NCBI GenBank assembly: GCA_013115145.1
Contig: JAAPAO010000285.1
Span: 1 to 43,028 of the forward strand
Source: Perkinsus chesapeaki ATCC PRA-425
Taxonomy: Eukaryota; Protista; Perkinsozoa
Length of the DNA stretch: 43,028 nt
Direction of reading: 5' to 3'
Made by a program: the position numbers and the translations under genes
Shown: piece by piece, positions 8,999 to 31,496 of the stretch
Layout of the letters: the number at the start of each line of letters is the position of its first letter
How positions within the stretch are numbered: the first letter of the stretch is position 1
The notes under the pieces: generated by a model
Databases searched by the model: none
Told to the model about the DNA's origin: nothing
The model's input: the letters and a program-made list of their open reading frames with translations, nothing else

Positions 8999-9200
8999 CT
9001 TACGTTTCTATACCTCACTTTATCTTGTGTCGACCATTTGATTGCTCAGCTTTCCGTAGAATGGAAACCCTTGTAAAAGAGGCTATCCCGTAGTTGGATG
9101 AAATGCTGTGTCCACCAGGAAGGGCTCGTACTCTAAGCCAGCATGCCTTCCCTTTATAATTAGACCCGATAGGTTCAGTTCAGTTCCTTATTTATTACCC

Positions 9201-11090
9201 ATGTTCCTTTACGTTCAGCTCGTCGCTACTCTCCTACCTCTAACCTTGACCTGCACTACCATAGTAGTCTCAAAAGGTGCCTCTAAGACTGGCATTCCCA
9301 TGGTTGCTCACACGGCTGATTGCTCAGAATGTGACACTCGGTTGGGTTTGATACCCCCTAGAGACCACAGTCCTCGTGATGTTCATGCCGTCTATGGTGT
9401 TGGCCATATCTACCCTCGGACATGGTCGAAGCGTGCGGCTATCTACGACGACCCTAATCATCAGCCAACTGGCGTCAATGCTACCGTCCCTGAAGTTCAA
9501 CATACGTACGGCTATTGGGAGTCCGAGTACGGTATGATGAACGAGCACGGTCTGGCAATGGGCGAGTCTACCACGGAGGTCAGCGTGCCCGGCAAGCCTG
9601 GTGTGGACCTAAAGGATCCCGTCAGTGGCGAGCTCGGTCAAGCGGTGTTTTCTATTCGAGAGCTGACAATGATCGGGCTCGAGCGCTGCAAGACCGCTGT
9701 ATGTGCCGTTTCAACTATGGGAGCCATGGCAGAGAAGTACGGCTTCTATCCCGAGAACTGGCAGACTGGTGAGAGCCTCACGATTGTTGATGCTGTTGGT
9801 GATGGCTGGATCTTTCATATAGCCCAAGACTCCACGGGGGAATCGGCCGTATGGGCTGCCCAGAGAGTCCCTGACGGTCATGTAGCAGCCATAGCCAATC
9901 AGTACACCATTAAAGACATACCAGAGTTCCCTAATGATGACTACATGTTCTCCTCCAACCTTCGCTCAGAGGCTTTGGCCTTGGGCTTATGGAACGGCCA
10001 GGAGCCTTTCAGTTGGGTCAGAGTCTATGGCACTGTTAGCTTGCAGTTGCCTATGTACACTAGTGTTAGGATATGGAATGTATTCCGCCACGCAGCTCCC
10101 GATCACGTTGTTGACTTTCACGAGAATCCCTTCGATCTCCCCTTCTCGGTGCCAGCTGACCATCTCCTCGACCTTGAGGACGTAATGGCTATCTATCGTG
10201 ACAACTACGAGGGTACCCAATTCGACTTAACCCAAGGGATCTTGGCTGGCCCATTTCATAGCCCTTACCGTCTTGAAGGTGGCGTCGGTGAGAAGGAAGT
10301 CCCGGGCCAGTTCGCGCGCGGTATATCTATCCCTCGAACGGCCTATACCATGATCGGCTATCCCGACCCTGAGAACCTGGTTCTCTACTACAGCGAAGAC
10401 GCTCCGGCCACCAGCCTGTTCGTGCCTTTCCTCTGCAAGACCCTATCTGAGGCGGCAGGCATGGAGCTCAGCAAAACCTCCAGTTTGTACGCTAAACCGT
10501 TTCAAGTAGGATACAAGGGAGACTTCTCCAACGCCAAGGAGACCGCCTGGTGGGCCTTCGATTTCGTGGCTAATTGGATGGATGCTAACTATGTTAATAT
10601 GTCTCAAGAGTTCGTCAAACCTGCTATAAGCTACTGGCAGCCTAAGCTACTAGAAGCTGCCGCCTCCAAGTCGACTGATACCTGCAAAGCTATTCAGGAG
10701 CATGTTGTGAAGTATTGGTGGAACCTTTCTGACACCCTCGTGGTTCGCTATAATGACGGTTTCTACAACTTCCCTCCCAGTAACCCAGCTGCCGTTGAGC
10801 ACATTGGCTACCCGGCAGACTATCTTGCTATGATCGGCTACAACAACTACTTCTACTCACCCCAGTACGTTCAGCCAGCTCAGTCGACAATGGCTGCTGA
10901 AGATGTCGCGGCGAAGCATTCGACCATTCGAACCTTCCTCATTCTCATACTTGGAGGAATAATTGGACTTATTACTGGCCTCAATATGGAGAAGCATCGT
11001 CGACGTCGAGACCGATTGGCTTCTTCATCCAACTCCGCCACCACAACCCCACAAACCGGCTATACTCGTTTAATAAACTCTACTGTATAA
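9201..11090 (+). CDS. Peptidase C69 (dipeptidase A/secernin-like Ntn hydrolase), signal peptide plus C-terminal TM, intronless
   Basis: First ATG is 9201; the track start is GTG. The signal peptide is followed by CTTIVV (Ntn nucleophile Cys), AHTAD, MMNEHGLAMGEST and WAAQRVPDGHV..AN, with a TM segment FLILILGGIIGLITGL. Confidence 0.85.
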   Translation: MFLYVQLVATLLPLTLTCTTIVVSKGASKTGIPMVAHTADCSECDTRLGLIPPRDHSPRDVHAVYGVGHIYPRTWSKRAAIYDDPNHQPTGVNATVPEVQHTYGYWESEYGMMNEHGLAMGESTTEVSVPGKPGVDLKDPVSGELGQAVFSIRELTMIGLERCKTAVCAVSTMGAMAEKYGFYPENWQTGESLTIVDAVGDGWIFHIAQDSTGESAVWAAQRVPDGHVAAIANQYTIKDIPEFPNDDYMFSSNLRSEALALGLWNGQEPFSWVRVYGTVSLQLPMYTSVRIWNVFRHAAPDHVVDFHENPFDLPFSVPADHLLDLEDVMAIYRDNYEGTQFDLTQGILAGPFHSPYRLEGGVGEKEVPGQFARGISIPRTAYTMIGYPDPENLVLYYSEDAPATSLFVPFLCKTLSEAAGMELSKTSSLYAKPFQVGYKGDFSNAKETAWWAFDFVANWMDANYVNMSQEFVKPAISYWQPKLLEAAASKSTDTCKAIQEHVVKYWWNLSDTLVVRYNDGFYNFPPSNPAAVEHIGYPADYLAMIGYNNYFYSPQYVQPAQSTMAAEDVAAKHSTIRTFLILILGGIIGLITGLNMEKHRRRRDRLASSSNSATTTPQTGYTRLINSTV

Positions 11091-11642: not shown

Positions 11643-13416
11643 TTAGCCCGAGTGCTCGTCAACCGAGCCCGAGACCTGTCCTGGCGGCGTACCAACAGGA
11701 CCATGCGTGAGCTCGCCGGGCCTTTCAGACTCAAGCATCTCCATCGACGGCTCGCTTGTGAACGGATTCTCAAGACTGACAACCCGCTTGCCGAAATGAT
11801 ACCTGAATATCGGTGAAAACCAATAGGGCGTAGGACCAGGCGTTCAACAGGCTACCAAAAGGGGTTGTGGTTGTCGTCTCTGAACATGACCCATGGGCCG
11901 CCTTCAGCGGTGCTTCTTGAACGATCAATCAACACCTGAGCTTCCTCGGGTGGGACCAGAAAGCCTCCACGGAAAACTTGACCTAATAGCGCTAGTGCCG
12001 CCAGTCGAGCATCCTGTCGAAAGCTCACCAGTGTTGTCGATGCTAAGATGGACGTGCTGTCTGCGGCGCCCTTTGCCATGTAATTTAATAAAACATTGAG
12101 TGCAGAATAGATCCACGCAGTCCTCGCAAAGGACAGTTGCGTTGAGGTGCTCGCACTCCTGAGGAAGACGACATCTCTCCCATCCAAGGAAGATACTTCT
12201 TACCTGACAAACAAGTCCTGAAATAACCCTCTTCAAATGGTTGTGCAATTCGGGCCGAGATGCATGAGTTGTCACGTAGCAGTTGTCGCAGAAGAAGCTA
12301 CCACACTGGACACACTGACATGTAGCGATAACCTCATCGCAGGCGCCACCTAGCATAAAGTTCGCATACTCATTCATGGACGAATTGACTTACAGACTAG
12401 TTGCTCCACATCAGCTGTCACATGACCTCGTCGGTTCCCGGTGGCATGGGTGGCGTTGAAGCAGTCCTAAGTATAGCAGCCTTTCCACTTCAGTGGAGAG
12501 TTTCGGCTCTACTTGGCAGTAATAATCCTGACAGACTTCACACTTGAGAACTGCGCTTTTATCCTCGCACTCTTCACACATCACAACCGCCTCGGGCTTC
12601 TTAATTATATCATCCTTCACCTGATGCCAGCCGTACTCACTAACTCTATCTTTCCCTTCACACTTGATTCTTTCTAAAGCGTCTTAAAAAGCCAATATGG
12701 GCCTCCATGTCGGAAAGGAACGTTGTTAGGTCGTACTGCTTAGCAACATATGCCTCCAAGGTCTGCTTCAGGCATCGCACCTGTCAAGGTGATGATGGGC
12801 CATCATGCCTCCAGATGCACCGACCAAGAAGAACTCTTTAGTGGGGTCAACTCCGAGTAGCTGAGGGATTTGTTCACAAATCTGCGGTGTCGATACGGGT
12901 AGCTCGAGCGCTATTCGCTCATGCAGGGCCTTCAGTATGAATCTGGCCTCAACTTGCTCGTCCTGCGCGGCTTGCAGCCTCACGTGTATTTCTCGCGACC
13001 ATCGTCGGTGTCCTTCATTATCTGCTCCAATAGGAACTAAAATTGACCCTATTAATAAAACTGGCAGACTTGGCGGCGGTCATTTTTGTCACTTTAGAGT
13101 ATGTCTTCTGTTTGTGATAGAGTTGGGAATAATGCTCTATTACAGGGTGGACCTTTTGGACCTTCTTTGTTATCAGGTTGTAATACATTGTGGACCCATC
13201 TTGACCGGTGAACTCCTTCCACTCTTTGTGATCAATCTGGGGGTACACCTCAGCAGGATTCGAGAAAAAGTCGGTATGACCGACCTTCGCCTTGCATGCC
13301 TCTTTAGCTATCCACAGACACTGCGGTTCGGCTACTGGATCCATACCTAGTAGCTTCGCTACAGTCACCAGCCTTGACGCTGGTGGATTGTCCACTGATG
13401 ATTGCATCACAACCAT
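11643..13416 (-). CDS. CEP164-like WW-domain protein with coiled coil and tandem B-box-type zinc fingers, multi-exon
   Basis: N-terminal AKLLGMDPVAEPQCLWIAKEACK..EWKEFTGQDGSTMYYNLITKKVQKVHP resembles the CEP164 N-terminal WW region. Three CxxC/His modules follow (CEECEDKSAVLKCEVCQDYYC; CDEVIATCQCVQCGSFFCDNCYVTTH; CEDCVDLFCTQCFIKLH..H), then a WW-like WVMFRDDNHNPFWYH. Stop TAA at 11645-11643. Confidence 0.7.
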
Positions 13417-13617
13417 TTGCCCCAGAAATGCCTCGCAAGAGCAGCACTAGAATGTTACCAACTAAACACATCAACCTGTGGGGTACAACATCGGCACAGT
13501 AGGCATGCATTGAAGAACATTGAAGATAGATAGTCAGACATATCTCAGGCGAACAGGCAACTACAACGACCTTGACCGCCTGTGCGAGAAAGCCGAACTA
13601 ACCAACATGGGGACAGA

Positions 13618-13691
13618 GTTGGATTGTGTCAGGCTTCGCGGGGCGATCAAATGCCTTTACCGCGTAACCTTCATTCGTTCAGCTAACCAAC
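13618..13691 (-). promoter_or_regulatory. Eukaryotic SECIS element, form 2
   Basis: Minus strand reads AUGA-A (core 13674-13671), helix GGUUACGCGG/CCGCGAAGCC (one A.A mismatch, one G.U), unpaired UAAA, apical mini-stem GGC/GCC, 3' UGAC, and lower helix GUUGG/CCAAC. It lies in the 3' UTR of a gene with an in-frame TGA. Confidence 0.85.
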
Positions 13692-13717
13692 ATCAAACGG
13701 TCAAAGGGTCGATGCAT

Positions 13718-15009
13718 CTACCCACTGTTGCTGATGGGCGACCGGGACGCCTCCTCATCATCATTTTCGGGCACCGCTGACTTCAAGCCAGACCCTAGTA
13801 TCGCATCCAGTTCTCCTGCTGTCCTCATCTCTTTCAGTCTTTCAATATTCTCAATGAAATTTCCTCTTAGGAAGATCTGCGGGAAGCTGTTCTGTCCGGT
13901 AAAGGTTGTCAAGGCATTCTCAATTTCAGAGACGCTGGCGAATGTATCGACGTTGATAACCTCCAAGGAGTCGGTTATCTAATGAACCCTCGACCACTTT
14001 ACCATAATAAGCGCTTACCATGTTAAGTTCAGCCACGGCAAGCTTGCATTGGGCAGAGCAAGACCAAGCGAAACATACAATCGCTGCAGTACCGTTGATC
14101 TTCCGATTTACGTATTGCATCGCCTGAATTCCGTACCGACACTTCCGTGATCGTATCTATGCCGCCGCCGCCCTACCTCAGCTTCATTGCTTATCTTATC
14201 CTCTTCGCAACCAGCGTCCGACTTCTGAACGATCTCGGTGATCTTTAGCGTCCCATCCAGGCAGGCTTCGACGTCGGCTGCCATGTCAGGTGACTTGAGG
14301 CTCCAAAAGCGGACCACCTTGCCACTAAGAAAGGCAAAGGCATCCTGAGGTCACCCACGCATTTCGCAGCACTCTTGATTAATCAGAAACTTCCCGAAGT
14401 TGAATGGAATCGGTTTCAGCTTCCCCGTCTTGTGGTTGTACAGGCCACAGTGGAACTTGAGATATCTAATAACCGTTTCAGATATGGTCGCCATGCAACT
14501 CATGATAGATACGTGCTACTCAAAAACTGGATGAGCATCTTCTCCATTAACATTGACTGGGCTTGCCAGTAGAAATACCTCCCCCTTAACCCCTTTGTAG
14601 GGCGCCATAACCCTCGTCACGAATTGGTCTATTTTAGTTTGAACTTTCAAGCCTTGTGTCATGAACTGCCTGAAGGAGGAGCGTCTTTGTCCATCTCTTT
14701 CTAGTCATTCCTACCGGCTCGGAAATCCGATTATTTTGAATTTTTTGTCCCCAAATTTGCTGCCGATTTCCCCAAAGACTTTGTAATCGGCAGCGGTCAA
14801 GCCTCATTTCGAGGCGACGTTGGCCACCAGCACCACATGGCCTGAAACGGTGCACTAAACCAACAATAATAAATACGAGCTTCACCTTCGAGCGTCTTGA
14901 AGTCGAGGGTGTCCCCGTCTATAAGCTCACAGGAGAGCTCATAGAAGCTCTTGGCTGTGATGCGAGGCTTGGTGGCACCAAAGCCTAACGCACTGGCAGC
15001 AGTTCCCAT
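13718..15009 (-). CDS. GPX: Selenocysteine glutathione peroxidase fused to a C-terminal glutaredoxin-like domain, about 335 aa, 7 exons
   Basis: Exons 15009-14886, 14841-14715, 14669-14520, 14465-14373, 14324-14177, 14123-14019 and 13978-13718 total 1008 nt. All introns are GT-AG and phase-compatible. Motifs: VVLVANVASK-U(TGA 14806-14804)-GLT, IIGFPSRQFMTQ, VNVNGEDAHPVFEYLK, PFNFGKFLINQDGKVV; then Grx-like IVCFAWSCSAQCK...TGQNSFPQIFLRG...GELDAIL. Confidence 0.9.
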
Positions 15010-15302
15010 TGGACAGTTGCTCTGGTTCGGGCGTGAAAAAGCAAAATCACTTAATTTGAGATGACCACAAAAGTGGGAGAGCTTTCGAGAGTGAGTGACT
15101 CCAGCTAAAATATACTGTTCTACAATCAGATGTCAGACTAGAGCTTACGAGACAAAAAAGCGAGACGACTGCTGCGATTTTATGGCGCGCGAGAAATATG
15201 TTGGCACACTTCCCATTCTGGAAATGACAGTGATCACGAGATGGCAAGATTTGATTTGACTTGGTCGCCGTCTAGAGTTTGCCACTACTACCTTACGTTA
15301 GT

Positions 15303-15468
15303 ACAGCACTACTATTAGTGCTGTCAGACTGACTATTAGGCCACTATTGACTAATAGCGCTCTCTGGCGTTCAAGCGTCGGAGAGTGCTCCTAAGGTTGA
15401 TTGATTCAATCTCTTGATTTTAGGCGTATTCGTATCGGGACCTGCGACCAGTGACTGGTCACCAGTCG
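15303..15468. other. Cluster of hairpins and palindromes in a divergent intergenic region
   Basis: 9-bp stem at 15303-15324, 7-bp stem at 15333-15357, 14-bp stem with 3 G.U pairs at 15356-15389, and overlapping interrupted palindromes at 15446-15467. Confidence 0.6.
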
Positions 15469-15517
15469 GAAGTAGCAAGATCGATACTATCCTTTAGCGA
15501 TTACATCCATTTTTATA

Positions 15518-16306
15518 ATGTCAATCACTATGACTAAACTACCATTATTCATCATCTGTTTCGTCTCGTGTACTGCTATTAAGAAGTCCACCACCACCAT
15601 CAACAACAACAACAACAACACTCAGACGACTGTTAATGTGCTCCAAGAGCAGGAAGTAGGCCCCGCTCGGTGTAGTGGTATTAAGACGATTATCATTTAG
15701 GCGAGCTCAGCAAAGCTGTCAAAGGCTCCGGTAGAGGAAGATTACATCTTCAGTGAGTACGGTGATGGGAAATTTGTGAAACTACCCAAGTCGCCATTTT
15801 GGAGGAACGTTCGAATCTACAAAGAAGAGCATCCATTCTTCACCCCAATTGGTGACGAGATCCACGTTGATAGGCTGGAGAAGATGAAGCCTTCGAATAA
15901 CCAGGTGCGCGATTTATTAGGGCGCCAACTTCAGCTTATGGATCGCAATAACTATGTTGATGTCGGATATTATTATATGACCGAAAATGGCGACTTTGCT
16001 GTTTACTCTGGTCGCGGTGACGACCTGGAGATATTCCAAGACGGTTGGACTCTCTACAAAGGGGGCTTTTACCAGTACCGCGGCAAAGGGGATTATTACC
16101 TATCACCATCGGGTGCCATGTTTAAGATATCCAACAAGAAGAAAAGATCCGGTCCTTACGAGAATCCAGTTACTGGAGCGACCTACCTGTTCAATGAAGA
16201 GCTGTGGGTCTACTATCCTGAGAGCTCGAAACCCGACGAAAAGATTAGACGCCCTAGGGGGAACAATGTCGGCAGACGGATGCCATGGATGAGAAACCGC
16301 TTCTAG
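15518..16306 (+). CDS. Secreted hypothetical protein, 2 exons, poly-Asn and Tyr/Gly-rich
   Basis: ATG at 15518 and a signal peptide (LPLFIICFVSCTA). A phase-0 GT-AG intron ends at 15700, and exon 2 is in frame with ORF 15776-16306. Confidence 0.65.
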
Positions 16307-16690
16307 ATGTTGTGCACATGACGGGAATCATTCCTGTTGGACATGATGCTCACGGCAGTGTATCAGACTTTTTGCAATCTGCACCAGTTGTCTTGGGGCA
16401 TACTCGTGCCTTGATATGATGACAGACTGGGTGGGGGATGAGTTAAAGTTAGCCAATGTTCGGGAGGAGCTAGAGTAGTCCAAATCTTTACATTTAGCCA
16501 GTCTTCCCTGCACGCATTCCTCACAGTAAGTACTTCAGTCACGAACCGACTCACTATACCGCGATCTTCTTTGCACATGGGAGATGCCCGTAGTTAGACT
16601 TAGAAACATAACATTAGTCGTAGACACAGTTGCACACGATTGTGAGGGATTTCGGACTCTTGGAAGTGCTTAAGTATATCCAGCCAACCA

Positions 16691-17682
16691 ATGACTGGAC
16701 CTCGGAATGAAGAAGAGACGCCTGCCTCGCCAACGTCATCGGAACTACTAATGCAAGGCATCCTAGACGAGGATTTACCATTTCACTATTCGGACGATGA
16801 GGAAGAGGAACCTCGGAAGTGATGGGGCACTCTGAAAACATAATAGAGCTTGCTACTGTTAGGAGCTCAGGAAGGCAAGGGGGCATGGTTGATGTCGAAA
16901 GCAAGAAGAGCATCTTTGAGGGTGAAACATTGCTCGCGATCAGAACGAGAGATAGCAGTCTAGTTGGTGGCTTCAGATTGTACAGAGGACCATTCGTTAG
17001 GGGATTTCATTACGATTCCGTCACCGCCGGTATCAAGTCCGGCATCAACGCCCAGCGGTCGGAGAGCTCCCAGGAGAAGGCGATGTACATATTAGATATC
17101 ACTGTGATCCGCTAGGCAGCCGCGTCGTCGGCAGGTAGCGTCGAATCACCTGCCTCGTCATCATACTGCGCCTTTCCAAGTGGTGGTGAAGATTCTTGTC
17201 GGCCTCGGTCTCCGGCGGGCGTCCAACTTGATAATGAGAATACCGACAATTCCTTCTGTTAGTAGAATAGTGTGTGAACAAAGGGACATATCTGCCTCTC
17301 AGCCCCAGACACGAGAGTAGCGGTAGAACTGCACAAGCAGTTAGCGTTGGCCCGAAGCCGCTGTCATGAGCTGGAGCAGGCTGATAAGGTTGACTGAGAA
17401 CAATACGCGAGGACTAAGATCCCACTGAGTGAAACAATGTAGATTCATAACTCTGACATCACCGCGTTACGAGCATCGAATATGGCATTAAGAGCAGAAG
17501 TAAACAGCGCAAAACGACAAGTGAAGCTGTCGAATGTGAGCTTTCATGTCGAAGTGTTGGAGTTGTTCATATTGTAGGAGGAAGCCCAATCTCTGCGCCA
17601 CCGCTTGGATGCCACATCTAGAGCGCTGTCTGATCTAGTAAGTAGATGGAAAGCTTCAACCTTTCCTGACAAGGAGAACTAA
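16691..17682 (+). CDS. Hypothetical acidic/coiled-coil protein, multi-exon
   Basis: Short open exons flanked by GT-AG introns (MTGPRNEEE...; ELHKQLALARSRCHELEQADK; EEAQSLRHRLDATSRALSDL). Internal exon structure and stop are uncertain. Confidence 0.4.
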
Positions 17683-17854
17683 GTAGAAGTATTGTGACAT
17701 ACGCGCTCATCAGTTGTTTGCCGTTTATGGTACAAGTCCAATATATATGCAGCACGTGGACTTGGGTCCGTATTACTAGTAGATTTACTATAGTAGTGGT
17801 CCAACTTTGCGCAATGCGATCTTGTCATTGAAACACATTACTAGCGTACCTTAA

Positions 17855-19556
17855 ATGGTAAAGTCGCGTACGACAGTGATTTGGATAGAAATCGAGCAAC
17901 GCAGCATTGGAGGCTCAAACTGGAATCCTTCTACAAAGCCGGAAAGAGCAGCAACCTCTTCACGAACCGGCAGAGAACCGGAAGGCTTCCATAGTGGAGG
18001 GGAATAAATCAACAACCGTTACTCCGAGGTGATGGTGCCTCGTTAGCTTGTGGGAACTTCGTATGGGCCGTAGGCAACGAGGCATTCAGACCGATGAACA
18101 CCCACAAGTTGAGATGGTCAGCTCTGAAGTGCTCGGGGAGCTTAAGCGGAAGTTGATGACATACGAAGAACGAGATGCTAAATATTCGAGGTACGGCGAC
18201 GTATCGGGTAGTTAAACGAACTCTTGAAGGTTCTTGCCTGGCATCGAGTTCATCCAGAGGCATGCCGAGGCCATGGGGAGCAGCACAGAAGACGCACATG
18301 GCGGGGAGCTCTGGTTGAGGGTTATTGCTTATCTGGATGAAAGGATAGAAGGGCTCGAGGAAGACAACAGAACTATGCGGGAGAGAGAAGACCGAGTCAG
18401 ACACCTTCAGGCAAGGCAACGCACTGAGTGAGTAATCAGCGCTTTCCCAGAGAGCAGCTGCCAGTGAGGTTGATGGAGAAACGGTGCAGACTATCAAAGA
18501 GTTGCAGCAACAACTCCGAATCAAAAACGATCTTATAGAAAGTCTTGTACGGCGGAGGCTTTCAACTCCTGGTTGTGAAATCATAAGTTAGGTGAAGCGA
18601 CAAGCTAACACATTGTCAGCCGAGAGCGCTGTCAGTCGTGAAGAGCACAGGTCATTCTGGTCTCTCGCTGCCCCGATGACGAGCAGTCCCAACGGACCAG
18701 CAGCTTCCGGTGAGATCATTTTGCGAATGACTACTGTTACTCGCCTCAACAACCGGTATTTGGTTAATATAACGATTAACGATCCTTCATGATAAGGCCG
18801 TAGATTAATTTAGATTCAACTACATCTCGCTTGGTCGAGCTTTCCTCAATACTGGCATATGAGAGAGACCGAAGACGACAGCTAGAGGCCTTGCTCCAAG
18901 AGCAGGTGTGGCTCTACGTGTGGTTGGAGGCCTGATGTCTTGGATGCTCAGACAGCAGCGACGGGCACAGCGATTGCAGAACGTGACAGATTCAAGAGGG
19001 GCGAAGATTCACTGTTGGTTGACTTCAGATCATTAGCGAGCCAGGTGGATTATTGATATCTTCGTGGAAGTGTACGAGTTTTGACACATCAGGTTTCACT
19101 TCTCCTCCGTGAGCTCCACACCATCACCACATCACAGGGGCATAAAAACAGAGATAGCGAACCAAGGCGAACACGAAGCGAAGCGACCAGCATGAGGTGC
19201 TTGTGAAATGCTTGAACGTTCCGTCTGTCAAACTGTTCAGGGCATTGCAATCCCTCCAAAAGCAGCTGGTCCGCTTAACTCAACGAGCTGATAACCGGAC
19301 GACATCCAGCACTTCGATACTGGGTCAGACGCGACAATTCACTAATAGCGTGATGAGGTGAGAGAAGGCAGGTTCGGCATCCCTCTACAGTTAGAGTGGT
19401 ACAGAGTCATCCTCTTAGTGTCCCTGGAGTCCGGCGGAGATCAACCACAAGATATAACTGTGCGGTTTCCCACGGAGTAGGCCGCGTCCTTCCGTTCGTG
19501 ATTGGTTCAATCGTTTGCCTCTGCCAGTCCGGAAGCCCCGACAAGAGGAGTGGTGA
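17855..19556 (+). CDS. Hypothetical coiled-coil protein, multi-exon
   Basis: Phase-compatible exons encode heptad-rich segments (ELKRKLMTYEERDAKY; YLDERIEGLEEDNRTMRERE; IKELQQQLRIKNDLIESL). Ends are uncertain, and it may join the upstream gene. Confidence 0.45.
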
Positions 19557-19919
19557 CACAGATATAGATCTTAGCATGACTCAAAAGCACGCGATAAAGG
19601 TATTTGCATTATGTCTGTAGTTGCAGCTGCGCCCATGTGATCGCTTCTCCCCTACGGCCCATTCAACACAGAAGCTTGACTTCATTTCGCCAGACTACCA
19701 AGTCGCCCTCCCCAACTCGTCCGCATCACTCGACGGCAGGGGGGTTTGCCCAGAGACAGTCTTGGTCGTCTGCAAGCGAGTTCTTCCGTGGATTATAGCT
19801 CATGCATAATGCCCACTGTGATTGTATCTTCATCGAACCGCTTGCGTTATCGAGTTTAACGGTGCTGATGAGCCGCTGGAAACTCTACGCAAAACTCACG
19901 TAACAACAGAAATAATACA

Positions 19920-21032
19920 TTACGGTATTATCACATCTTCATGGGCCGCACTCTCAATTCGAGTGAATATTCCAAACAGTCTTATACCTCGGTAAACAGC
20001 GCCAAGAGGGTGCTCTGTGACGGTGACACCTGTCAGAGTGGGATTGAACTCAACTTCCCACTTAACGATGTCCTGCTCAAACTCTAGCACTAGACGGTTG
20101 TTGTGCCATTGAACGACGGTGGCCAGGCCTAGGTTGTCAGAGAATATTTGAGCATATGAAGCATTCCTTGGGAGAGGATTCGTGACACGTTTGAAGTTGA
20201 GCGTATCGTATGGATTATACCGGTACGTGTCGAAGAGCTGAAAAGTGCTAGCATGCACTCCAGTAAGAACCCTGTCCACTACTAAGCCGATGGTAGTCCC
20301 AAGGTGGGGAGGAGGACCGATAACCATGCAAATAAGGCCTTCTCGGCCAACCGTGAAGAAGTCTGTTATATTTGCGAAGAAGATTTCCCCGTTGCCAACA
20401 GGCCAGCTACAATTCAACGTGCCGGCGTCCTCGAAGTAGCGCAGAGCATGTCGGACTTCCAATTGGCCTTTTTGGAATATACCATAGTCGTCCATGATGA
20501 GCCAACGGACATCGGGGAGAGCGAGGGCATTGAGAATGTCAGAGTGAACGTGGTCGTAGGTATGAGATGCGTCTATGAGAACAACTTCCACCGGGTTAGC
20601 TGGCATCAGGGTGGAGGCCCAGGAAGTACTGTAGGCATCGAATGAATGCCATTCGATATTGCTAGTGTTACCAGCGAACATCTTCACATTGTCCATGGCC
20701 GTGAAGACATTGCCGAGGTAATACTCCAGCACGATCACGTGTTTGAATATCTTAGACAGTACAGCGGTAGTGTAACCGTGATAAATGCCAACTTCAAGGA
20801 CTGTCCATTCTCGGGCTCCCGGAAGGGGGGCGAAGAAGGCCGCAATGTCACGCTTGAATTCTGGCGAAATGGTTATGCAGGATCGTTCGAATGCAGACTG
20901 TCTTTTCAAAACTTCGTCAACGTCGTCTAGTAAGGCATTGACCTCTTCCGTGGAGCGGGTGTTATCGGGAGGATGTGATGTGAAGCCCCCTTGCGCGAAC
21001 ACACAAGCTGATAGTGCTAAGCCAAGTAGCAT
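19920..21032 (-). CDS. Signal-peptide-bearing class I SAM-dependent methyltransferase (Methyltransf_24-like), intronless, 370 aa
   Basis: Signal peptide MLLGLALSACVFAQG, motif I VLEVGIYHGYTT, and VLIDASHTYDHVHSD...LIMDDY typical of this class. Confidence 0.8.
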   Translation of the reverse strand: MLLGLALSACVFAQGGFTSHPPDNTRSTEEVNALLDDVDEVLKRQSAFERSCITISPEFKRDIAAFFAPLPGAREWTVLEVGIYHGYTTAVLSKIFKHVIVLEYYLGNVFTAMDNVKMFAGNTSNIEWHSFDAYSTSWASTLMPANPVEVVLIDASHTYDHVHSDILNALALPDVRWLIMDDYGIFQKGQLEVRHALRYFEDAGTLNCSWPVGNGEIFFANITDFFTVGREGLICMVIGPPPHLGTTIGLVVDRVLTGVHASTFQLFDTYRYNPYDTLNFKRVTNPLPRNASYAQIFSDNLGLATVVQWHNNRLVLEFEQDIVKWEVEFNPTLTGVTVTEHPLGAVYRGIRLFGIFTRIESAAHEDVIIP

Positions 21033-21726
21033 TCGGATAACGATGAGGCTGGTGTTGGCAAAAGGTGGGTGGACGACTGAGTGCGTGAACTGCGGAGACT
21101 CGGACGGGGACTATCTCGAACACAACAAAGCTGCGAAATGACGCCGAATAGAATCGATACTTTTAGTGCTTACGAAACTAGCCTACCAAATGAGATTATA
21201 GGCCACCGAGAAGAAGAACGAAATAATATTAGATTAATCGATTGCCGACTGGGAAGACCACAACTGCGATGGCGATGTTCGCAAATACGAAACTTACAAA
21301 ATCTTCAAACTGAATTACTTCTAGAAACACACGACAACACACAATTGCGAAAAATAGACAACAAGAGCTGTTAGCCGACGCTTCGATCTCGAGGCTCATC
21401 CTCATCATAGGTCTGAGTCTCTGGCGTCGAGGTGCTCTGCCGGCGTGATTCACTGCAGAAGGCCGTGCTACCAGTAAATATATTATCACCTATACAACGA
21501 GATACAAGATACTGGCGAGCAGCCTTTTACCGTATTTGAGAGATATTCGACGTGGTGTAACCAATTCTGTTATACTATGATACCCATGCTTCATAGGCCG
21601 TAACAGAGGCAAGCGGCGTAACCTAACCACGCATCATCATCATCATCAAGGGTCACGGGTGGAACAGTCAAGTAGGAAAGTGTATCGTCAACTACACCGT
21701 AAATGAATGCAGAGGCAATCGAAGAC

Positions 21727-24700
21727 TTACGCCGCTTCTATTTTGTCTCTATTCTGTAACATTATCTCGCTTCTCCTATACCGTCGGGCCACTCCAGCAG
21801 TAATGGTACCGCATGCCACAGAGAATGGCTCCTTTACTAATTCAACTTCACTAACCCGATACTTGTGCCCTTTTGGAAGGATGTCAGTCGACAACTCGTC
21901 CATCTCCCCTGAGGCAGGTGGCTCGTTTATGATGTATATTAAAAAAGCCTACTCATTATTCTGGCACGTAGCCAGTCAGACTCTAGAAGCTCATCGACAT
22001 GGAAAAGGATCTCAGCTTCGGCAGCCCACAGCTTTGCCGCTCGCACGCATGGGACCTGCGGGACTTAGATTATTGGATATTTCCCAGCGAGACCTTACAA
22101 TGAGAGCGATGATCGCCTCTGCCTTAGATGAGCCAAACGCTACACACTGATCGATGCCACTGCCTGGGGAAGGCGATGGGGAGATACGGACAAGTGAGGG
22201 AAGGATCACAATGAGTTTCATATGCATGCTCAATCCTGCTGGCTGATACCATCCTTCCATCCCCGACGTCGAGCTGCTCACATATTCGCTCATCAAACAA
22301 CTGATGTCATTGGTACTCTAGACCTATAGTAGCATGCCTACCTTAACTGCCCCAGCGGGGAGGACCTCGACTACATCACCAGTGTGGAACCATCCACCGG
22401 GATCTAAGGCATGACATGCTCAGACCCCCTTCAGATGCGAGGCGTACCGAAACGTTGTAGAGTCGCTTGAGGCCTTCGGAAGTAACCGGGGGAGACGCTA
22501 TTGCCTCGTACGCCTGAGACAAAGTAATGCACGGCGGGTGGAGAAAAGGAGGCAGTGTACATAGCTCCCCTCTAGGCCTGAGCTCACAGGTCTGAGCATC
22601 TACATGGGCTACTGAGCAGTCGCCAATGCTCGAACTATGGGATGCATCAACCTGATGATAGAGTTGACCGGCAGATGCTGTTTTATATTAGCTTACCAGC
22701 CTCATATCCAGACTGGCAATAGGTCCGCCGACAAGACCACAACGATAGTCTCTTGGACTGGTAAGGAGGGCTATACCTCCACACTCTGGCACAGTATGAC
22801 AGTTAACCACCGAGCATTGTAGAGCCGTCTATAAGAGATGGTAGGTCAGGTGCTGACAAAAGTTGGCAAGTACTTTTAAGAGGTGATGAAGTCCAATGGG
22901 TAGGGTCCGACCACCGCTGACAATCAGTCGAACTCGGCCTCCTAGAGCCGACCGATTGCCCTTCACAGATGAAGGTCCTAACACACCACTGCCGACCACA
23001 ACCATCACAGCAATGCACCTTCCACTCGAAATGGGCTCGCTGATCTCGACCGCAGCCGTCTCTGAAGTATCCAGGGAAATCGATTCTTCCTTGAAGTCGT
23101 GGAGAGAATGGTATCGGATAGGCGTTCTGATGACAGAAGGAGATGGTATGAGCCTTCACCGGCAGTGTACTCAGGTAGCCTGGCTCAGCCAGTACCACAG
23201 TAGGATGGAGCAATGATAGATCCGACTTCACCAATGTATCGCTCAACGCTCCGCCTGAGGGCAAGTAGGTATCAACTCCTCAGCGCGTGGAGCTACCTGG
23301 ATGGCAATTACTAACGAAACCAAGGCAGCTGCCGTGATACATCCCCAGGTAGATGATGGTCCTGTATAGTGGGTCAGTGATGGGTAAGGTAGAGGCGATA
23401 CCTTCACAGACAACAGTATCAACTAGGTGAGGAGCAGCAGGAGGAGAAGGCCTACAGTCCTGGGATCCAAGCTGTAGTGGTGGTGGGCTACCACCGCCCT
23501 CTCGATACTCTGATAGGGCTGCCAGTGTAGCTATACAATTGCTATGGGTAACCATCACTCCCATAGGGTCCCCTATCGAACCTAGGCAAGCCCTCCTGGT
23601 ACATACAGAGAGACAGACAGCAGGTACCGCCAGTGTACTGTAGTAGAGCTACATCTGATGGTGTTGTCGGATAGGGGGAGAACGGTCTGCCTTGGCCGAG
23701 GGCCATCACCTGAGCCACCTGTGCGATCCTGGGTTATACATAGGTCCCACGTAGGGTAACGTTAAAACCATTAGGTCCATCGCCTCGGCTTGGGCCAGGA
23801 AGGAGGGATCTATCTCTCGACGGTTATCAACATCAATGACCTGATAGAGCTATTGGCAGTAGTGACGGCAGGGGAACTCACCACTAGGCATTTAACATGG
23901 GCAGAGTTGCTGCATTTCAACGCCGCCTCTAGATGGTCACGAGTAACGAACAGCAATGGCATCCTGGTATCGGATATCATATAAGAGAGCTGAAGGTAGA
24001 AAGGAGGAGCTATTCAGTTGGTTATGGTACCATCGGGGAGGGTAAGTCCTCCTGAAGTGGCACAACTGTGATGCCTAGTATATGGCAGGCGAACTCAGTA
24101 AGGATCCAGTTGATGCAGCCGTGTCCATATATACCTGTGTAGGACAGCAAGCCATCAACACCAGGACAATGCGAGTTCGCCCTGGTATGCTATCATCGGC
24201 AGGAAACCGACCAAAGCAAATTGCGCTGTAATTTCTATTGGCTTGGCAGCCGTATCTCAAACTGTATATTCACTGCGGTGATCCGATTTCGATTTCTAGA
24301 CGAGGAAGACCAAAAAAGACTCCGGTGATGCGGATGGTGTACCAGCCATGCGAAAGAAGAGCCTGTAAGGTTCATCATCGAATGCAGCCTTCTGGCAGAC
24401 TCCAAGCTGCTGGATGCCACTTGCTAGTCGATTGGCTTGGGTATCTGCGGGAGATTTATTGGCGCGGTGACGATGAGGGGGGTACAGAAGTCTCGATAGC
24501 TCATGAACCAGTAGACGTCGCCGTGTCGCGCGCCAAGAAATGGTCTGTCGCCATGCAGCATACGGGAGAGCCTGCAAGATTGCCGCAATCCATCTTTCGG
24601 GATTGCCCAACTTACTCTAGAAGGGACGGTAAAGTGGTCATATCAGGGGACAGCATAGGGGTCGATACCAGAGAATCTAAGGTTCATGCTGGTTAGATAC

Positions 24701-24883
24701 AAAATAGGTCACCTTACTCTTGCAGACAACATTCCTATAGATGCTAGTAGATGCATCATCTGATGGCGGCAAGAGCGGTAGTGAGTACACCGGATCCGTA
24801 AATTGCCATGTAGCACCGCTGCCGTCCCCCTTATTAGGATCGCCATTCCCAGGCGGATAGGCGTCGCTGACACACAGACCCAT
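21727..24883 (-). CDS. Long-chain acyl-CoA synthetase (AMP-binding) homologue with degenerate catalytic motifs, multi-exon
   Basis: Collinear ACSL landmarks: SIYRN, DRPFLGAR..SYRDF, DVALLQYTGGSIGDPMGVMVTHSN, TLPITDPLYRT, DLSLLHPTVV, VEGY, PRGEL, GWFHTGDVVE, IDQCVAFG and KEPFSVACGTIT. The 3' end is uncertain. Confidence 0.8.
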
Positions 24884-25402
24884 CGACGGTAACTATGTTA
24901 ACGAATTAACGCTGACCAACCCAGAACCACCAGCCATTGAAACGATAATAAATTACGTGGCACGGTCTCGAGGAACAATATACAGATCTTCGTAGTCTGT
25001 GATGATCTCACTTGCACTGCCTAAGGAGACATCTATAACCAACTAAGGTGTGCCTTACGCTGCTCTATGATGCCGTTACAAACGGGGTACCCTGCCTTCC
25101 TGAGGAGCAGTATACCCTCGGGAGCCATACCGAAGGCCTCGGCTACGTACTTTATGCAAGCTGGGAAAGGCGTATGTTTAGGTATCGAAATAACCTGCTA
25201 ATAGTCTCGGTAGTAGTAGAAAATGAAACCGTCACACGCCACAAAATACCTTGAATCTTCGACGCTCATCAGATACGTCTATGAATCTAACCGTTACATC
25301 CCCCGACATCCCTATAAATCCTGACGCTAACACCAGCCCATGCGGTGACTTCAACGCAACAACTGTCTCCTACTACAAGTAATAATGATATCATGTCATC
25401 CA

Positions 25403-26128
25403 TTAGGATGCCTCAGACCCTATCAACTGCAGTATAGCAAAGGCAACACCTGCCTTAACTCCAATGTTACGTAACCGTCCCCGCTCCTCTGGTGTCATAA
25501 ACACACTAATAGTTCGGCTAACAGCACTGTCCTTTATAAGCTCCTCTAGTATCCCCTTCAGCACCTCATCTCCTTCCTCTATTGCCCCTCCTATAGCGTC
25601 CACTAAACAAAGCAGCAGCTCCGGGTCCACAGTATTGGCCTTGTCAGAGCTTTTCAGTCCTCTAACCACACCCTCCGCCCCAAGCTCCCGCAGCAACGCT
25701 GCCCTCTCCCTATCAGTTTTGGCCCTCCTTAAATTTCTCTCCAGATCCAGCGCCTTAACCCTCCCGCTTTCTACTGCCACTTTCGGCGTCCTCTGTGCCT
25801 CCTTACATCGCCCACTACTCTCCTTCCCGCTAAAAGCTCTGTTGTACGTCTGATGGCGAGCTGGCTTGCTGAACTCATTCCGACTGATTGGGTTTAGCCC
25901 ACAGGTTGCCACTATATCTTGGAACTCCTTATACGACCCACTGGTGTATATCGCTCGCTTCTTCGCCTCATCTACGGTCGTATGCTTCCAATCCGAGTAC
26001 TTACTCTTTTCTACCTGCACTGAACTTCCAACGGTGCTCGACAATCCTCCCTTTCCGACTACCTCCTTCTTCAGACTCCCAAACGACTTCGGATGCCCGT
26101 GTAGTTTCTCCTCCTTGATGATAGGCAT
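25403..26128 (-). CDS. CCDC103: CCDC103/DNAAF19-like dynein assembly factor, intronless, 241 aa
   Basis: WKHTTVDEAKKRAIYTSGSYKEFQDIVATCGLNPI resembles the dynein-attachment N domain (W..NxAKxRA...YEEF..V...L.P), followed by an RPAP3_C-like helical region. Confidence 0.7.
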   Translation of the reverse strand: MPIIKEEKLHGHPKSFGSLKKEVVGKGGLSSTVGSSVQVEKSKYSDWKHTTVDEAKKRAIYTSGSYKEFQDIVATCGLNPISRNEFSKPARHQTYNRAFSGKESSGRCKEAQRTPKVAVESGRVKALDLERNLRRAKTDRERAALLRELGAEGVVRGLKSSDKANTVDPELLLCLVDAIGGAIEEGDEVLKGILEELIKDSAVSRTISVFMTPEERGRLRNIGVKAGVAFAILQLIGSEAS

Positions 26129-26301
26129 TAAAATGTACTAAACAAGTCCCATGGAGTCATCAACGCAACAATAGAGAGCGGCGAAGAAAAAGAGGTTCAT
26201 CCAGCCACCAGCTATTATCAATAATGCTACTCAGAGGCAGCTTGGTCTTGATAGACTCTTCCAGCCTGGTGGCACCGCCGCCACACACTATTGGAAGTAA
26301 G

Positions 26302-26985
26302 CTACTGCCCACCAACAACCCCAGCAACCTCCTTCTGGGCAGTTACCTCATCCCAAAACACAATCATAGGATCACGCTTACAGAAGGACCGCACCTAAGG
26401 GGGTATTCATACGACGATCTGACGGAAAGTTGGTAGTACAGCCAAAGCGAGGTTATCGGTATCCTCGAACATCCGTCCATGGCAACCAGCCTTCACAGAT
26501 TCTGGCACCTTATCCTTACCACCGTACACCGCAGCCTTCAGGTCCTACTAGTAAGAATGAGACAACGCTTGGCGGGCGGAGGCTCCCACCTGAACCGTAG
26601 CTGTAGCCTGCTGGTACACTGGTTTCCCATTACTCCACGAACCGTACTCCTTACCCCAGATAGGCACCTAAATTGGTAGTTAATACGATGAATTGAGGGA
26701 AATATGGTATAATACCTTCTTGGTAGTATCAGGAGTAACGTTGCTATCAGCTACATACACCCTATATTTATACTGATGCTCGGCACGCCAGCGGACCCAG
26801 AAGAGCACAGCTAAACAAAAAACTAAGGCAGAGAAGGCCGGCCCAACCTCACCTGGATAGCCGAAGACCAGCACCCATTTCAGGTTACTCTGGGAGTACC
26901 AGAAGGTATCGTAAAGTCTGCCAAGCCGAAACTTGAAGCCGTCTCGAAGGAAGGAAAATGCGAAACGTTGGGAGGAGGTTGACAT
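26302..26985 (-). CDS. Myzozoan-specific cytochrome c oxidase subunit, ApiCox18-like, multi-exon
   Basis: Spliced product: MSTSSQRF..FKFRLGRLYDTFWYSQ..VFGYPAVLFWVRWRAE..VYVADSNVTPD..VQDLKAAVYG..GCHGRMFEDTDNLALAVRSFCKRDP. The exon chain is clean; the family name rests on recalled similarity. Confidence 0.55.
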
Positions 26986-27118
26986 GGAATGATCCGCAAA
27001 TACAGGGGGCTCCACAAAACTGCGTCGCGCGCCATGAAATTGCCCAGTGCACCACACAGACAGCCTTGGTAAAAGAAACAGACGTTGAAGGTTGACGGTG
27101 TCCCTCCTTACGAGCCCC

Positions 27119-28627
27119 TTATTTCTGGGCTCGCTTTTTCTTATTTTTCTTCGGCTTTTGAAAGGCAAATTCCTCCCGCATATCCGCTAACTCCTTAAAA
27201 GCTTCCAAGATCTCCGCCTCCTCACCAGAGTTCTTGCCGCATATCTTAGCTACCTCCTCTGGACTCTCGCTAGGGTCCTCAGCTAAATACAAGATCCTCG
27301 CAAAGTCATACTAGGACCCCTTACCTCCGGCCCTCTCCTCTATAACGCTGCCTTCTGACCCAACATCGTCATCATCATTATCAACAACCTCATCACCATC
27401 CTCCTCGTTTTCCTCCTTTACCGTTTCTTGCTCAGACTGCTGACGTCGCTTCTTCGGTGACTTGTGCTCAGATGCCTTAGGCTCAGCCGGCGTCTCCGTC
27501 TTCCGCTTAGTCTTATCAAATACACGTATCCGGTTAGCCTTCTTAACCTACCGAGCGGCATCACCTACACCCCATCCCTTGTCCACACTACCTCCTCTTC
27601 CCACTCATTCTTCTTTAATTTATATAACATTAGTGTGCATCTAGCATCCTCCACAGAGCTATGGGCTCCTGTCTGGATCTTACGATCCAAATGAATCTCG
27701 GTTAACCTGATAACATAGACAGTGAGCGTTAGATCTGTTAACATGCCAGACGTCATCACATACCCAATGCCTTCAAGCTACGACTGGACGGCACACTTCA
27801 ATACGCAGACAAAAAGATCGAGTGAAACGACAAAGTGCATAACGAAAAAGGCAACTCAAATCCAAAGGCAAAGGTCTTTTGTATATAAAGGTAGGTCTTA
27901 CTTTTTAAGGCTGGGCACCTTGGTAGTAAGGCCTTCAGGTCGTAGGCCAGGATACGTACTAGTGTCTCTAATCAATAGAGGATCTATCTTCCCTTCCAAC
28001 TCCAGTATCTAAACCACAGGCGTATCCAAAGGTGTAGTGGCGGCTAGGCTGACCTCGATATCGTGATGAATAGCATGGCCGACGACGACCTTCTGATTGA
28101 GAAGTATCTCAGCGGCTTGCTTTTTAACTTCATTTGCAGGCTGACCGAGTCTGTTAAGAGTGGCTTCATCAAGACCAGTCACTTGAGCTCTGTAGTCTGT
28201 GACCTTCTTAGTGGGCTTAACCAAAGCGTCCAGTAAGACCTGAAGGGATAGGGACTCTCTTGAAAAGTAGTATGCGGGCTTACTTTTCCGAAGTAGTTGA
28301 CAATGCTAGCACGAGCCAAGATGTTCTCCTTCCCATCTGGCCCAGCACCGACCATTTCACAGTCAATAGCAACCACGTCTTTACTAGAAGGGAAGCTACT
28401 TGAAGCGAGCAGCTGGCGAGGCCGCAAAGGAGCCTTGGCGACTTGAACCTATCACAGGAGGCGCCAGTTCAACCTAAAGATACGTTTGAGGTCGACAGAG
28501 GTACCTCGTATTGTTTCCGTTTAATTGGTTTTGTCTTGATATTTTGTCTGACCTTCTCCCAGGAGCTGGTGCTGCTATCAGCGTCACCGTCCTTCTTGCC
28601 ACGGTTACCACGGGGCTTGTAAGGCAT
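27119..28627 (-). CDS. REX4: RNA exonuclease 4 (DEDDh) with acidic/basic C-terminal tail, multi-exon
   Basis: Motifs VVAIDCEMVG, LARASIVN, VKPTKKVTDYR, VVGHAIHHD and PSLKKLTE..IQTGAHSSVEDAR. ATG at 28627, stop TAA at 27121-27119. Confidence 0.92.
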
Positions 28628-31293: not shown

Positions 31294-31496
31294 TGAGGCT
31301 GCCCTAATAGGGGCCCCTGGTCAACCTGGGCATACTGTCATCATAAATTGTATCCAAAAGCACCATTCTGTATAATCGCTTTATTACCATAGTCGATATT
31401 ACTTTACCCTTCGTCGTATTAGTTCAAATTGTTTTGCATTCGCCGAGCCGATGTCCCATTTGTTGTGTTACCAAGTTGTCATCGAAGTCCGGCGCC

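What the first reader, a model, noticed from the sequence alone, without database searches (positions are those of the whole stretch)
13618..13691. Form-2 SECIS about 45 nt downstream of the GPx-Grx stop codon
The AUGA/GA kink-turn core, roughly 10-bp upper helix, unpaired AAA and apical mini-stem are all readable by eye. It independently supports Sec recoding. Because it lies after the Grx-domain stop, it also supports the fusion being a single mRNA.
Basis: partly seen in the sequence, partly recalled or inferred. Interest (0 to 1): 0.72.

Follow-up and report, generated by a model that had tools for sequence, protein, structure and literature searches.

The report
SECIS hairpin of Perkinsus GPx-Grx gene
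A textbook-shaped RNA hairpin (a SECIS) sits just after the stop codon of a shellfish-parasite gene and very probably lets the gene's internal UGA 'stop' be read as selenocysteine; such signals are well known, so this is a sound annotation, not new biology.

Summary
On the minus strand, 43 nt after the TAG stop (13720-13718) of a seven-exon GPx/Grx-like gene, lies a hairpin with these parts:
- AUGA (13674-13671) opposite UGA (13631-13629);
- an 11-position helix II with one A.A mismatch;
- unpaired AAA (13658-13656);
- a 3-bp GC mini-stem.

Rfam SECIS_1 aligns it end to end, but at only 15.3 bits (gathering score 35). Four equal-sized control stretches gave no SECIS_1 match. My own SECIS pattern hits only this site in the window, and one coding-region false positive in 317 kb of Perkinsus DNA. 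The gene's single in-frame TGA (14806-14804) sits at the GPx catalytic position.

New here:
- The hairpin is the tip of a 155-nt stem-loop (13716-13562; z -5.3, sense strand only).
- An exact 11-nt direct repeat flanks the core.
- The gene and its SECIS are absent from the syntenic interval in P. olseni and P. marinus, so covariation could not be tested.

The scan has already noted other SECIS elements, and a paralogous GPx-Grx gene, on other DNA of this genome.

Verdict: a probable functional SECIS and a new member of a known kind.

The parts
13618..13691 (-).
   Evidence: Sequence. MFE of these 74 nt is this architecture, -20.8 kcal/mol. Rfam SECIS_1 match at 13683-13618, 15.3 bits, model positions 1-64 of 64.
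13671..13674 (-). 5' core AUGA; G13672 and A13671 form the tandem sheared G.A pairs
   Evidence: only pattern hit in the window.
13628..13631 (-). 3' core UGAC; U13631 pairs with A13670, then G13630 and A13629; C13628 departs from the KGAW consensus
   Evidence: consensus from PMC3753652.
13660..13670 (-). Helix II, 5' strand (11 nt); partner strand is 13641-13631; one A.A mismatch at 13665/13636
   Evidence: Same pairs in every fold.
13631..13641 (-). Helix II, 3' strand
13656..13658 (-). Unpaired AAA; 12 nt lie between the quartet's A13671 and the first of these A's
13642..13655 (-). Apical mini-stem GGC/GCC with an 8-nt loop, which makes it form 2 (type II)
13562..13716 (-). Whole predicted stem-loop domain: a 33-bp outer stem (13716-13677 with 13598-13562, six G.U pairs) carrying the SECIS hairpin and a side hairpin
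   Evidence: The 161 nt 13720-13560 were folded. MFE equals centroid, -66.5 kcal/mol, z -5.34, 0 of 200 shuffles as stable. Antisense strand -48.7, z -2.1. Arm duplex -42.2 kcal/mol, beaten by 0 of 2000 shuffles and 0 of 884 genomic controls.
13602..13622 (-).
13683..13693 (-). Upstream copy of the exact 11-nt direct repeat ATGTTGGTTAG; it contains the 5' strand of helix I
13598..13608 (-). Downstream copy of the same 11-nt repeat
13718..13720 (-). TAG stop codon of the GPx/Grx-like reading frame
14804..14806 (-). In-frame TGA (codon 54 of 330), the presumed Sec codon; 871 nt of spliced mRNA lie between it and the AUGA
13718..15009 (-). Seven-exon CDS: exons 15009-14886, 14841-14715, 14669-14520, 14465-14373, 14324-14177, 14123-14019, 13960-13718; six GT-AG introns of 44-58 nt; 990 nt in total
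   Evidence: Pfam GSHPx on the exon-2 piece and Glutaredoxin on exon 7. 36 PDB sequences at E up to 1, nearly all Grx, Grx-related or TGR chains, for exon 7.

Best explanation
This is a functional eukaryotic SECIS element of form 2 (type II). It lies in the 3' UTR of a Perkinsus mRNA that encodes a glutathione-peroxidase-like domain joined to a glutaredoxin-like domain.

Inferred mechanism, from the established SECIS pathway:
- The AUGA/GA kink-turn core at the base of helix II binds SECIS-binding protein 2.
- That protein recruits eEFSec carrying Sec-tRNA(Sec).
- The ribosome then reads UGA at codon 54, 871 nt upstream in the spliced mRNA, as selenocysteine instead of stopping.

Because the only SECIS lies beyond the Grx-like exons, those exons must be in the same transcript as the UGA.

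Shown here: the motif, its predicted fold, its rarity, its position, and the placement of the TGA at the GPx catalytic site. Inferred: that the element is transcribed, is bound and works.

The hairpin is probably only the tip of a larger 155-nt structured domain (13716-13562).
For: - All consensus parts are present, with 12 nt between the quartet's A13671 and the first unpaired A.
- Helix II, AAA and mini-stem recur in every fold, from 74 nt to 268 nt of context.
- Rfam SECIS_1 gives a full-length alignment at 15.3 bits. Four control stretches of the same size gave no SECIS_1 match at E up to 10. Three were in or beside the gene; one was on the pattern false positive in P. marinus.
- The pattern scan finds 1 site in the window against 0.27 expected. 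It finds 1 further site, inside coding sequence, in 317 kb of real Perkinsus DNA.
- The TGA is at the Sec/Cys site of GPx.
- The frame stays open through six GT-AG introns to a Grx-fold C-terminus.
- The structure is much more stable on the sense strand, -66.5 against -48.7 kcal/mol, as expected for an RNA-level feature.
- SECISearch3's authors report that non-metazoan SECIS elements are the hardest to score (PMC3753652).
- Unchecked notes of this scan list a selenophosphate synthetase and several selenoprotein genes in this genome, with SECIS elements 43-55 nt after their stops.
Against: - The score is far below Rfam's gathering threshold (15.3 against 35), and the site is not reported in the default scan.
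- C13628 departs from the KGAW core consensus.
- Helix II has an A.A mismatch; the mini-stem has only 3 bp and an 8-nt loop.
- No orthologue or paralogue sequence could be obtained, so there is no covariation or conservation evidence.
- The gene is absent from the syntenic interval of two related species. It also has unusual residues at conserved GPx and Grx positions, so a decaying duplicate cannot be excluded.
- The thermodynamically preferred fold does not form the canonical helix I.
Confidence: 0.8

Rival explanations
1. Relic SECIS in a decaying, lineage-specific duplicate. The element was a working SECIS in the parent gene. This copy is no longer expressed, or no longer makes a working selenoprotein.
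For: - The gene is absent from the fully covered syntenic interval in P. olseni and P. marinus.
- An unchecked scan note reports a seven-exon GPx-Grx paralogue elsewhere in this genome.
- Conserved residues are altered. My reading of the exon translations: FPSRQF where GPx usually has FPCNQF, FNFGKF where it has WNF.KF, and WSCSAQC where Grx has CPYC.
- Exons 3-6 give no Pfam hit on their own.
Against: - The 990-nt frame is open apart from the one TGA.
- All six introns keep GT-AG and the reading phase.
- All SECIS consensus parts are intact, and they sit in a structure with z -5.3.
Confidence: 0.08
2. Chance resemblance. A stable 3' UTR or intergenic hairpin happens to carry AUGA, AAA and GA. 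The TGA is then a true stop, an assembly error or a nonsense mutation.
For: Sub-threshold Rfam score. The pattern has a non-zero false-positive rate, with one coding-region hit in 317 kb. No comparative or RNA support.
Against: - The chance of a pattern hit in the 300 nt after this particular stop, on the right strand, is about 0.001.
- The per-family Infernal E-value is about 0.002.
- It coincides with a TGA at exactly the GPx Sec position, with homology continuing in frame after it.
Confidence: 0.07
3. The dominant feature is the long inverted repeat 13716-13677 / 13598-13562. It serves another role, such as 3'-end formation, mRNA stability, or a footprint of a small inserted element. The SECIS-like tip is secondary.
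For: The outer stem is far more stable than shuffles or genomic controls. An 11-nt exact direct repeat lies inside the element. In the preferred fold the canonical helix I is not formed.
Against: - No other copy of the element exists in the window or in about 115 kb of related Perkinsus DNA.
- All six non-Watson-Crick pairs in the stem are G.U on the sense strand, and the antisense strand folds much worse. That points to an mRNA structure, which is compatible with an extended SECIS helix I.
- This reading does not explain the catalytic-site TGA.
Confidence: 0.05

Closest known systems
Eukaryotic SECIS element, form 2 / type II (Rfam RF00031 SECIS_1; SECISearch3 description, PMC3753652)
   Same: - AUGA...GA quartet at the base of an 11-position helix II.
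- Unpaired AAA at the usual distance from the quartet.
- An extra apical mini-helix.
- Located in the 3' UTR of a gene with an in-frame UGA at a known Sec position.
   Different: - Scores 15.3 bits against a gathering score of 35.
- C instead of A/U after the 3' GA.
- Lies unusually close to the stop codon: helix I starts at +26 nt and the core at +43 nt.
- The preferred fold replaces the short helix I by a 33-bp stem, with a 21-nt side hairpin on the 3' side of the core.
Other SECIS elements noted by this scan in the same Perkinsus genome (SPS2, SelS/K-like, MSP, SelH, SelM, SelT; unchecked AI notes)
   Same: They are described as canonical AUGA/AAA hairpins. Several lie 43-55 nt after the stop codon, the same compact layout as here.
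   Different: Whether they also sit on long outer stems is unknown.
Thioredoxin glutathione reductase (a Grx domain fused to a selenoprotein; PDB entries such as 2x8c and 3h4k appear among the exon-7 matches)
   Same: A glutaredoxin fold and a Sec-containing redox enzyme in one polypeptide, with one SECIS serving the whole mRNA.
   Different: - In TGR the Grx domain is N-terminal and the Sec is in the C-terminal tail of a flavoenzyme.
- Here the Sec is in an N-terminal GPx-like domain and the Grx-like domain is C-terminal.
- The Grx-like active-site region here is atypical.

Membership tests
Eukaryotic SECIS (RF00031) | Core quartet with tandem G.A/A.G; consensus UGAN on the 5' side and KGAW on the 3' side | tested here: met
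   UGAA at 13673-13670 and UGAC at 13631-13628. The GA/AG pairs are intact. Only the last 3' position (C, not A/U) departs from the consensus in PMC3753652.
Eukaryotic SECIS (RF00031) | Helix II of defined length, followed by conserved unpaired A's (AAR) | tested here: met
   Eleven positions, 10 of them paired; AAA at 13658-13656, 12 nt after the quartet.
Eukaryotic SECIS (RF00031) | Form 2: an additional mini-helix above the A-rich internal loop | tested here: met
   A GGC/GCC stem with an 8-nt loop in the MFE and centroid of every context folded. This is prediction only.
Eukaryotic SECIS (RF00031) | Helix I below an internal loop | tested here: inconclusive
   The canonical 5-bp GUUGG/CCAAC helix is possible and is the MFE of the 74 nt alone. 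In 161-268 nt of context a 33-bp stem plus a side hairpin is favoured by 16 kcal/mol.
Eukaryotic SECIS (RF00031) | Reaches the family's curated covariance-model score | tested here: not met
   15.3 bits against a gathering score of 35. The alignment is full-length, and equal-sized controls give no match.
Eukaryotic SECIS (RF00031) | Lies in the 3' UTR of an mRNA with an in-frame UGA at a Sec position | tested here: met
   At the DNA level it is on the sense strand, 43 nt after the TAG. The TGA is at the GPx catalytic site.
Eukaryotic SECIS (RF00031) | Conserved, with compensatory changes, in orthologous mRNAs | not testable with these tools
   No orthologue was found by word search, by HMMER over 1.84 billion representatives, in JGI metagenomes, or by synteny in P. 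olseni and P. marinus.
Eukaryotic SECIS (RF00031) | Binds SBP2 and supports UGA read-through | not testable with these tools
   Needs a reporter assay, a binding assay or 75Se labelling.

The most novel reading that the evidence does not exclude
The SECIS core may sit on a three-way junction at the tip of a 33-bp stem rather than on an ordinary helix I. Two identical GUUGG strands, inside an exact 11-nt direct repeat, compete for the single CCAAC partner. The 3' UTR could then toggle between a canonical SECIS conformer and a junction conformer. That would be either a non-canonical SECIS architecture or a structural switch that tunes selenocysteine insertion.
Probability: 0.15. Interest if true: 0.6.

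Novelty: new member of a known kind. Interest (0 to 1): 0.3.

Why it matters
The SECIS is the piece of evidence that turns an apparent premature stop into a selenocysteine codon. It therefore supports annotating this locus as one selenoprotein gene (GPx-like plus Grx-like) that ordinary gene finders break or miss. It also adds a protist example that the Rfam model scores well below threshold, which is useful for recalibrating SECIS searches in alveolates. The larger 155-nt structure and the competing repeat are cheap to probe and could show how compact protist 3' UTRs present a SECIS. The element itself is of a long-known kind.

Tried and rejected
- Orthologue search with exon 7: the word search found nothing. 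HMMER over 1.84 billion representatives found only generic glutaredoxins at 38% identity or less. JGI metagenomes gave nothing.
- Synteny route, through the neighbouring C69 peptidase and a methyltransferase ORF: nine Perkinsus loci were fetched. Both flanks are conserved, but the interval lacks the gene in P. olseni and P. marinus.
- The 83-aa hit P0042 was followed to its contig L010 and proved unrelated.
- Exact look-up of the window's 370-aa methyltransferase ORF: not on record.
- tRNA scan of the window: none found.
- Search for copies of the 155-nt element, as for a repeat family: none found.
- A weak C/D-box snoRNA match at 13697-13768 (18.7 bits against a gathering score of 100) was rejected as chance. 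It overlaps the coding end.
- Literature: no paper in the held library describes Perkinsus SECIS elements or a GPx-Grx selenoprotein fusion.
- The exons were searched one by one by reference.

Full report
**What is in the sequence**

Read on the minus strand, the stretch 13691-13618 contains every part of a eukaryotic SECIS.
- AUGA lies at 13674-13671. The opposite strand reads U13631 G13630 A13629 C13628, so G13672.A13629 and A13671.G13630 can form the tandem sheared pairs of the kink-turn core.
- Helix II runs from A13670-U13631 to G13660-C13641. It has ten standard pairs (one G.U) and one A13665.A13636 mismatch (pair list).
- Above it come U13659, three unpaired A's (13658-13656), and a GGC/GCC mini-stem (13655-13653 with 13644-13642) closing an 8-nt loop. 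That makes it form 2.
- Folded alone, these 74 nt give this architecture as the minimum-energy structure, -20.8 kcal/mol.

**Is it more than chance?**

- The default Rfam scan of the window reports nothing at gathering thresholds.
- With permissive thresholds on 13300-13900, SECIS_1 (RF00031) aligns the site over model positions 1-64 of 64, with AUGA, AAA and GA in register. The score is 15.3 bits against a gathering score of 35. The E-value is 7.2 for 601 nt times 4227 families, which is about 0.002 for this family alone.
- Four equal-sized control searches gave no SECIS_1 match at E up to 10. Two were within the gene, one was in the downstream neighbour gene, and one was on a pattern false positive in P. 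marinus.
- My own SECISearch-like descriptor requires R-UGA, at least 9 pairs with at most one mismatch, AA at 9-14 nt, and GA opposite. It hits only this site in both strands of the window, against 0.27 expected in Markov-random copies.
- Over 317 kb of real Perkinsus DNA the descriptor finds one further locus, inside an aspartyl-protease ORF of P. marinus.
- The expected number of such hits in the 300 nt after one particular stop codon, on the right strand, is thus about 0.001.
- The authors of SECISearch3 note that non-metazoan SECIS elements are the hardest to score, and give the core consensus as UGAN/KGAW (PMC3753652). Here the last position is C rather than A/U, a minor departure.

**The gene it would serve**

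Upstream on the same strand lies a seven-exon reading frame.
- Exons: 15009-14886, 14841-14715, 14669-14520, 14465-14373, 14324-14177, 14123-14019 and 13960-13718.
- There are six GT-AG introns of 44-58 nt and 990 nt of coding sequence.
- The only in-frame stop before the TAG (13720-13718) is TGA at 14806-14804, codon 54, in the motif NVASK-TGA-GLT.

I searched the exons one at a time by reference.
- The 29 residues after the TGA match Pfam GSHPx at profile positions 34-60.
- Exon 1's best PDB match is the N-terminal strand of human GPx2.
- Exon 7 matches the second half of Pfam Glutaredoxin. It also matches 36 PDB sequences, nearly all glutaredoxin, Grx-related or thioredoxin glutathione reductase chains.

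The TGA therefore sits where GPx enzymes carry Sec or Cys, and the frame ends after a Grx fold. In the spliced mRNA the UGA and the AUGA are separated by 871 nt.

A relaxed scan of the minus strand from the TGA to the next gene finds no other SECIS candidate, apart from a poor 6-bp one inside exon 7. A Sec-decoding mRNA must therefore extend through the Grx-like exons.

Folding more context changes the lower part of the picture.
- The 161 nt from the stop codon to 13560 fold with -66.5 kcal/mol, and the MFE is identical to the centroid. Shuffles give -44.7 +/- 4.1, so z is -5.34, and none of 200 shuffles does as well.
- The antisense strand reaches only -48.7 kcal/mol, z -2.1.
- The stability comes from a 33-bp outer stem, 13716-13677 with 13598-13562, which includes six G.U pairs.
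- The duplex energy of the two arms is -42.2 kcal/mol. None of 2000 shuffles matches it (mean -17.2). None of 884 arm pairs of the same geometry taken along the window matches it either (minimum -34.3).
- In this fold helix II, the AAA and the mini-stem are unchanged.
- CCAAC (13622-13618) pairs with a second, downstream GUUGG (13606-13602) as a side hairpin.
- AGCUGAAC/GUUCGGCU (13684-13677 with 13598-13591) closes a three-way junction four nucleotides (GAAU, 13676-13673) below the tandem G.A pairs.
- The two GUUGG strands belong to an exact 11-nt direct repeat, ATGTTGGTTAG, at 13693-13683 and 13608-13598.
- No other copy of the 155-nt element occurs in the window or in the related loci.

These are predictions from thermodynamics. 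Protein binding and the non-canonical core are not modelled, so I treat the canonical and junction conformers as open alternatives.

**Comparative evidence**

- The neighbours are conserved. The C69 peptidase (9108-11090) is 82% identical to P. olseni proteins and 78% to the P. marinus-containing protein cluster. That supports the genus; the species name P. chesapeaki comes only from earlier scan notes.
- Synteny with P. marinus (L006) and P. olseni (L007) runs up to the start codon of the downstream B-box gene (window 13416) and then stops.
- On the other side, P. olseni contigs L008 and L009 are collinear with window 16353-32856.
- The tail of L007 overlaps the tail of L008 at 96% identity, so the P. 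olseni interval is fully covered.
- Neither that interval nor the gap-free P. marinus interval contains any exon of this gene.
- Searches with exon 7 found no orthologue in the word-indexed protein collection, among 1.84 billion HMMER representatives, or in JGI metagenomes.

Covariation could therefore not be tested. This copy of the gene appears specific to the window's lineage at this locus.

Unchecked notes of the scan report three things:
- a seven-exon GPx-Grx paralogue on another piece of the same genome;
- a UGA-recoded selenophosphate synthetase;
- several other selenoprotein genes whose SECIS elements lie 43-55 nt after the stop.

These notes fit the compact layout seen here, but they are leads, not evidence.

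**Interpretation**

The best explanation is a working form-2 SECIS that recodes UGA-54 of a GPx/Grx-like mRNA (confidence about 0.8).

The rivals are:
- a relic SECIS in a decaying duplicate, suggested by the gene's lineage-specific position and its altered GPx and Grx motifs;
- a chance resemblance;
- a long hairpin with another primary role.

Against family membership stand the sub-threshold covariance-model score and the unresolved helix I. The core, helix II, the A's, the mini-stem and the position all meet the definition.

**Verdict**

The element is a new member of a well-known kind. The extended stem, the competing repeat and the absence from sister species are modest additional findings. 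Transcript mapping, comparison with the paralogue's SECIS, and a core-mutant read-through reporter would settle the matter.

Noticed in passing
window 13683-13693 and 13598-13608 (minus strand): An exact 11-nt direct repeat, ATGTTGGTTAG, lies 85 nt apart and brackets the SECIS core. Each copy carries a GUUGG that can pair with the single CCAAC at 13622-13618. Its origin (a duplication footprint?) and its role are unexplained.
   Followed up: partly
window 13417-16350; L006 14027-17674; L007 9400-13692; L008 14834-20310: The GPx/Grx-like gene and the adjacent ORF 15776-16306 lie in a synteny gap. Both flanks are conserved in P. marinus and P. olseni, but their intervals hold aspartyl-protease-like sequence instead and contain no exon of this gene.
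   Followed up: yes
window 14715-14375 and 14123-14019 (minus strand): Conserved redox motifs are altered: FPSRQF where GPx usually has FPCNQF, FNFGKF where it has WNF.KF, and WSCSAQC in place of the Grx CPYC-type site. Exons 3-6 give no Pfam hit when searched alone.
   Followed up: partly
window 9108-11090 (+) and 19923-21032 (-): A Peptidase_C69 gene and a 370-aa secreted class I methyltransferase-like ORF have 82-85% identical P. olseni orthologues, but no identical entry in the protein collection. This genome's own calls for them seem to be missing there.
   Followed up: partly
L001 5537-6820 (the same P. marinus region lies within L006 14027-17674, mapped from the pattern hits at L001 6035-6124 and L006 15008-15097): P. 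marinus carries a 427-aa aspartyl-protease ORF (Pfam Asp), called on the Logan contig. There is no gene call in the NCBI record of that region.
   Followed up: no
L010 780-1092: An unrelated Logan contig (ERR12944157) has a glutaredoxin domain split by an in-frame TAG directly after the ...LCPKSM active-site region. This could reflect a variant genetic code or a broken gene.
   Followed up: no
window 13697-13768 (minus strand): A weak C/D-box snoRNA-like Rfam match (GlsR16, 18.7 bits against a gathering score of 100) overlaps the end of the coding sequence. It is most likely chance, caused by the GAUGAUGA codons.
   Followed up: no
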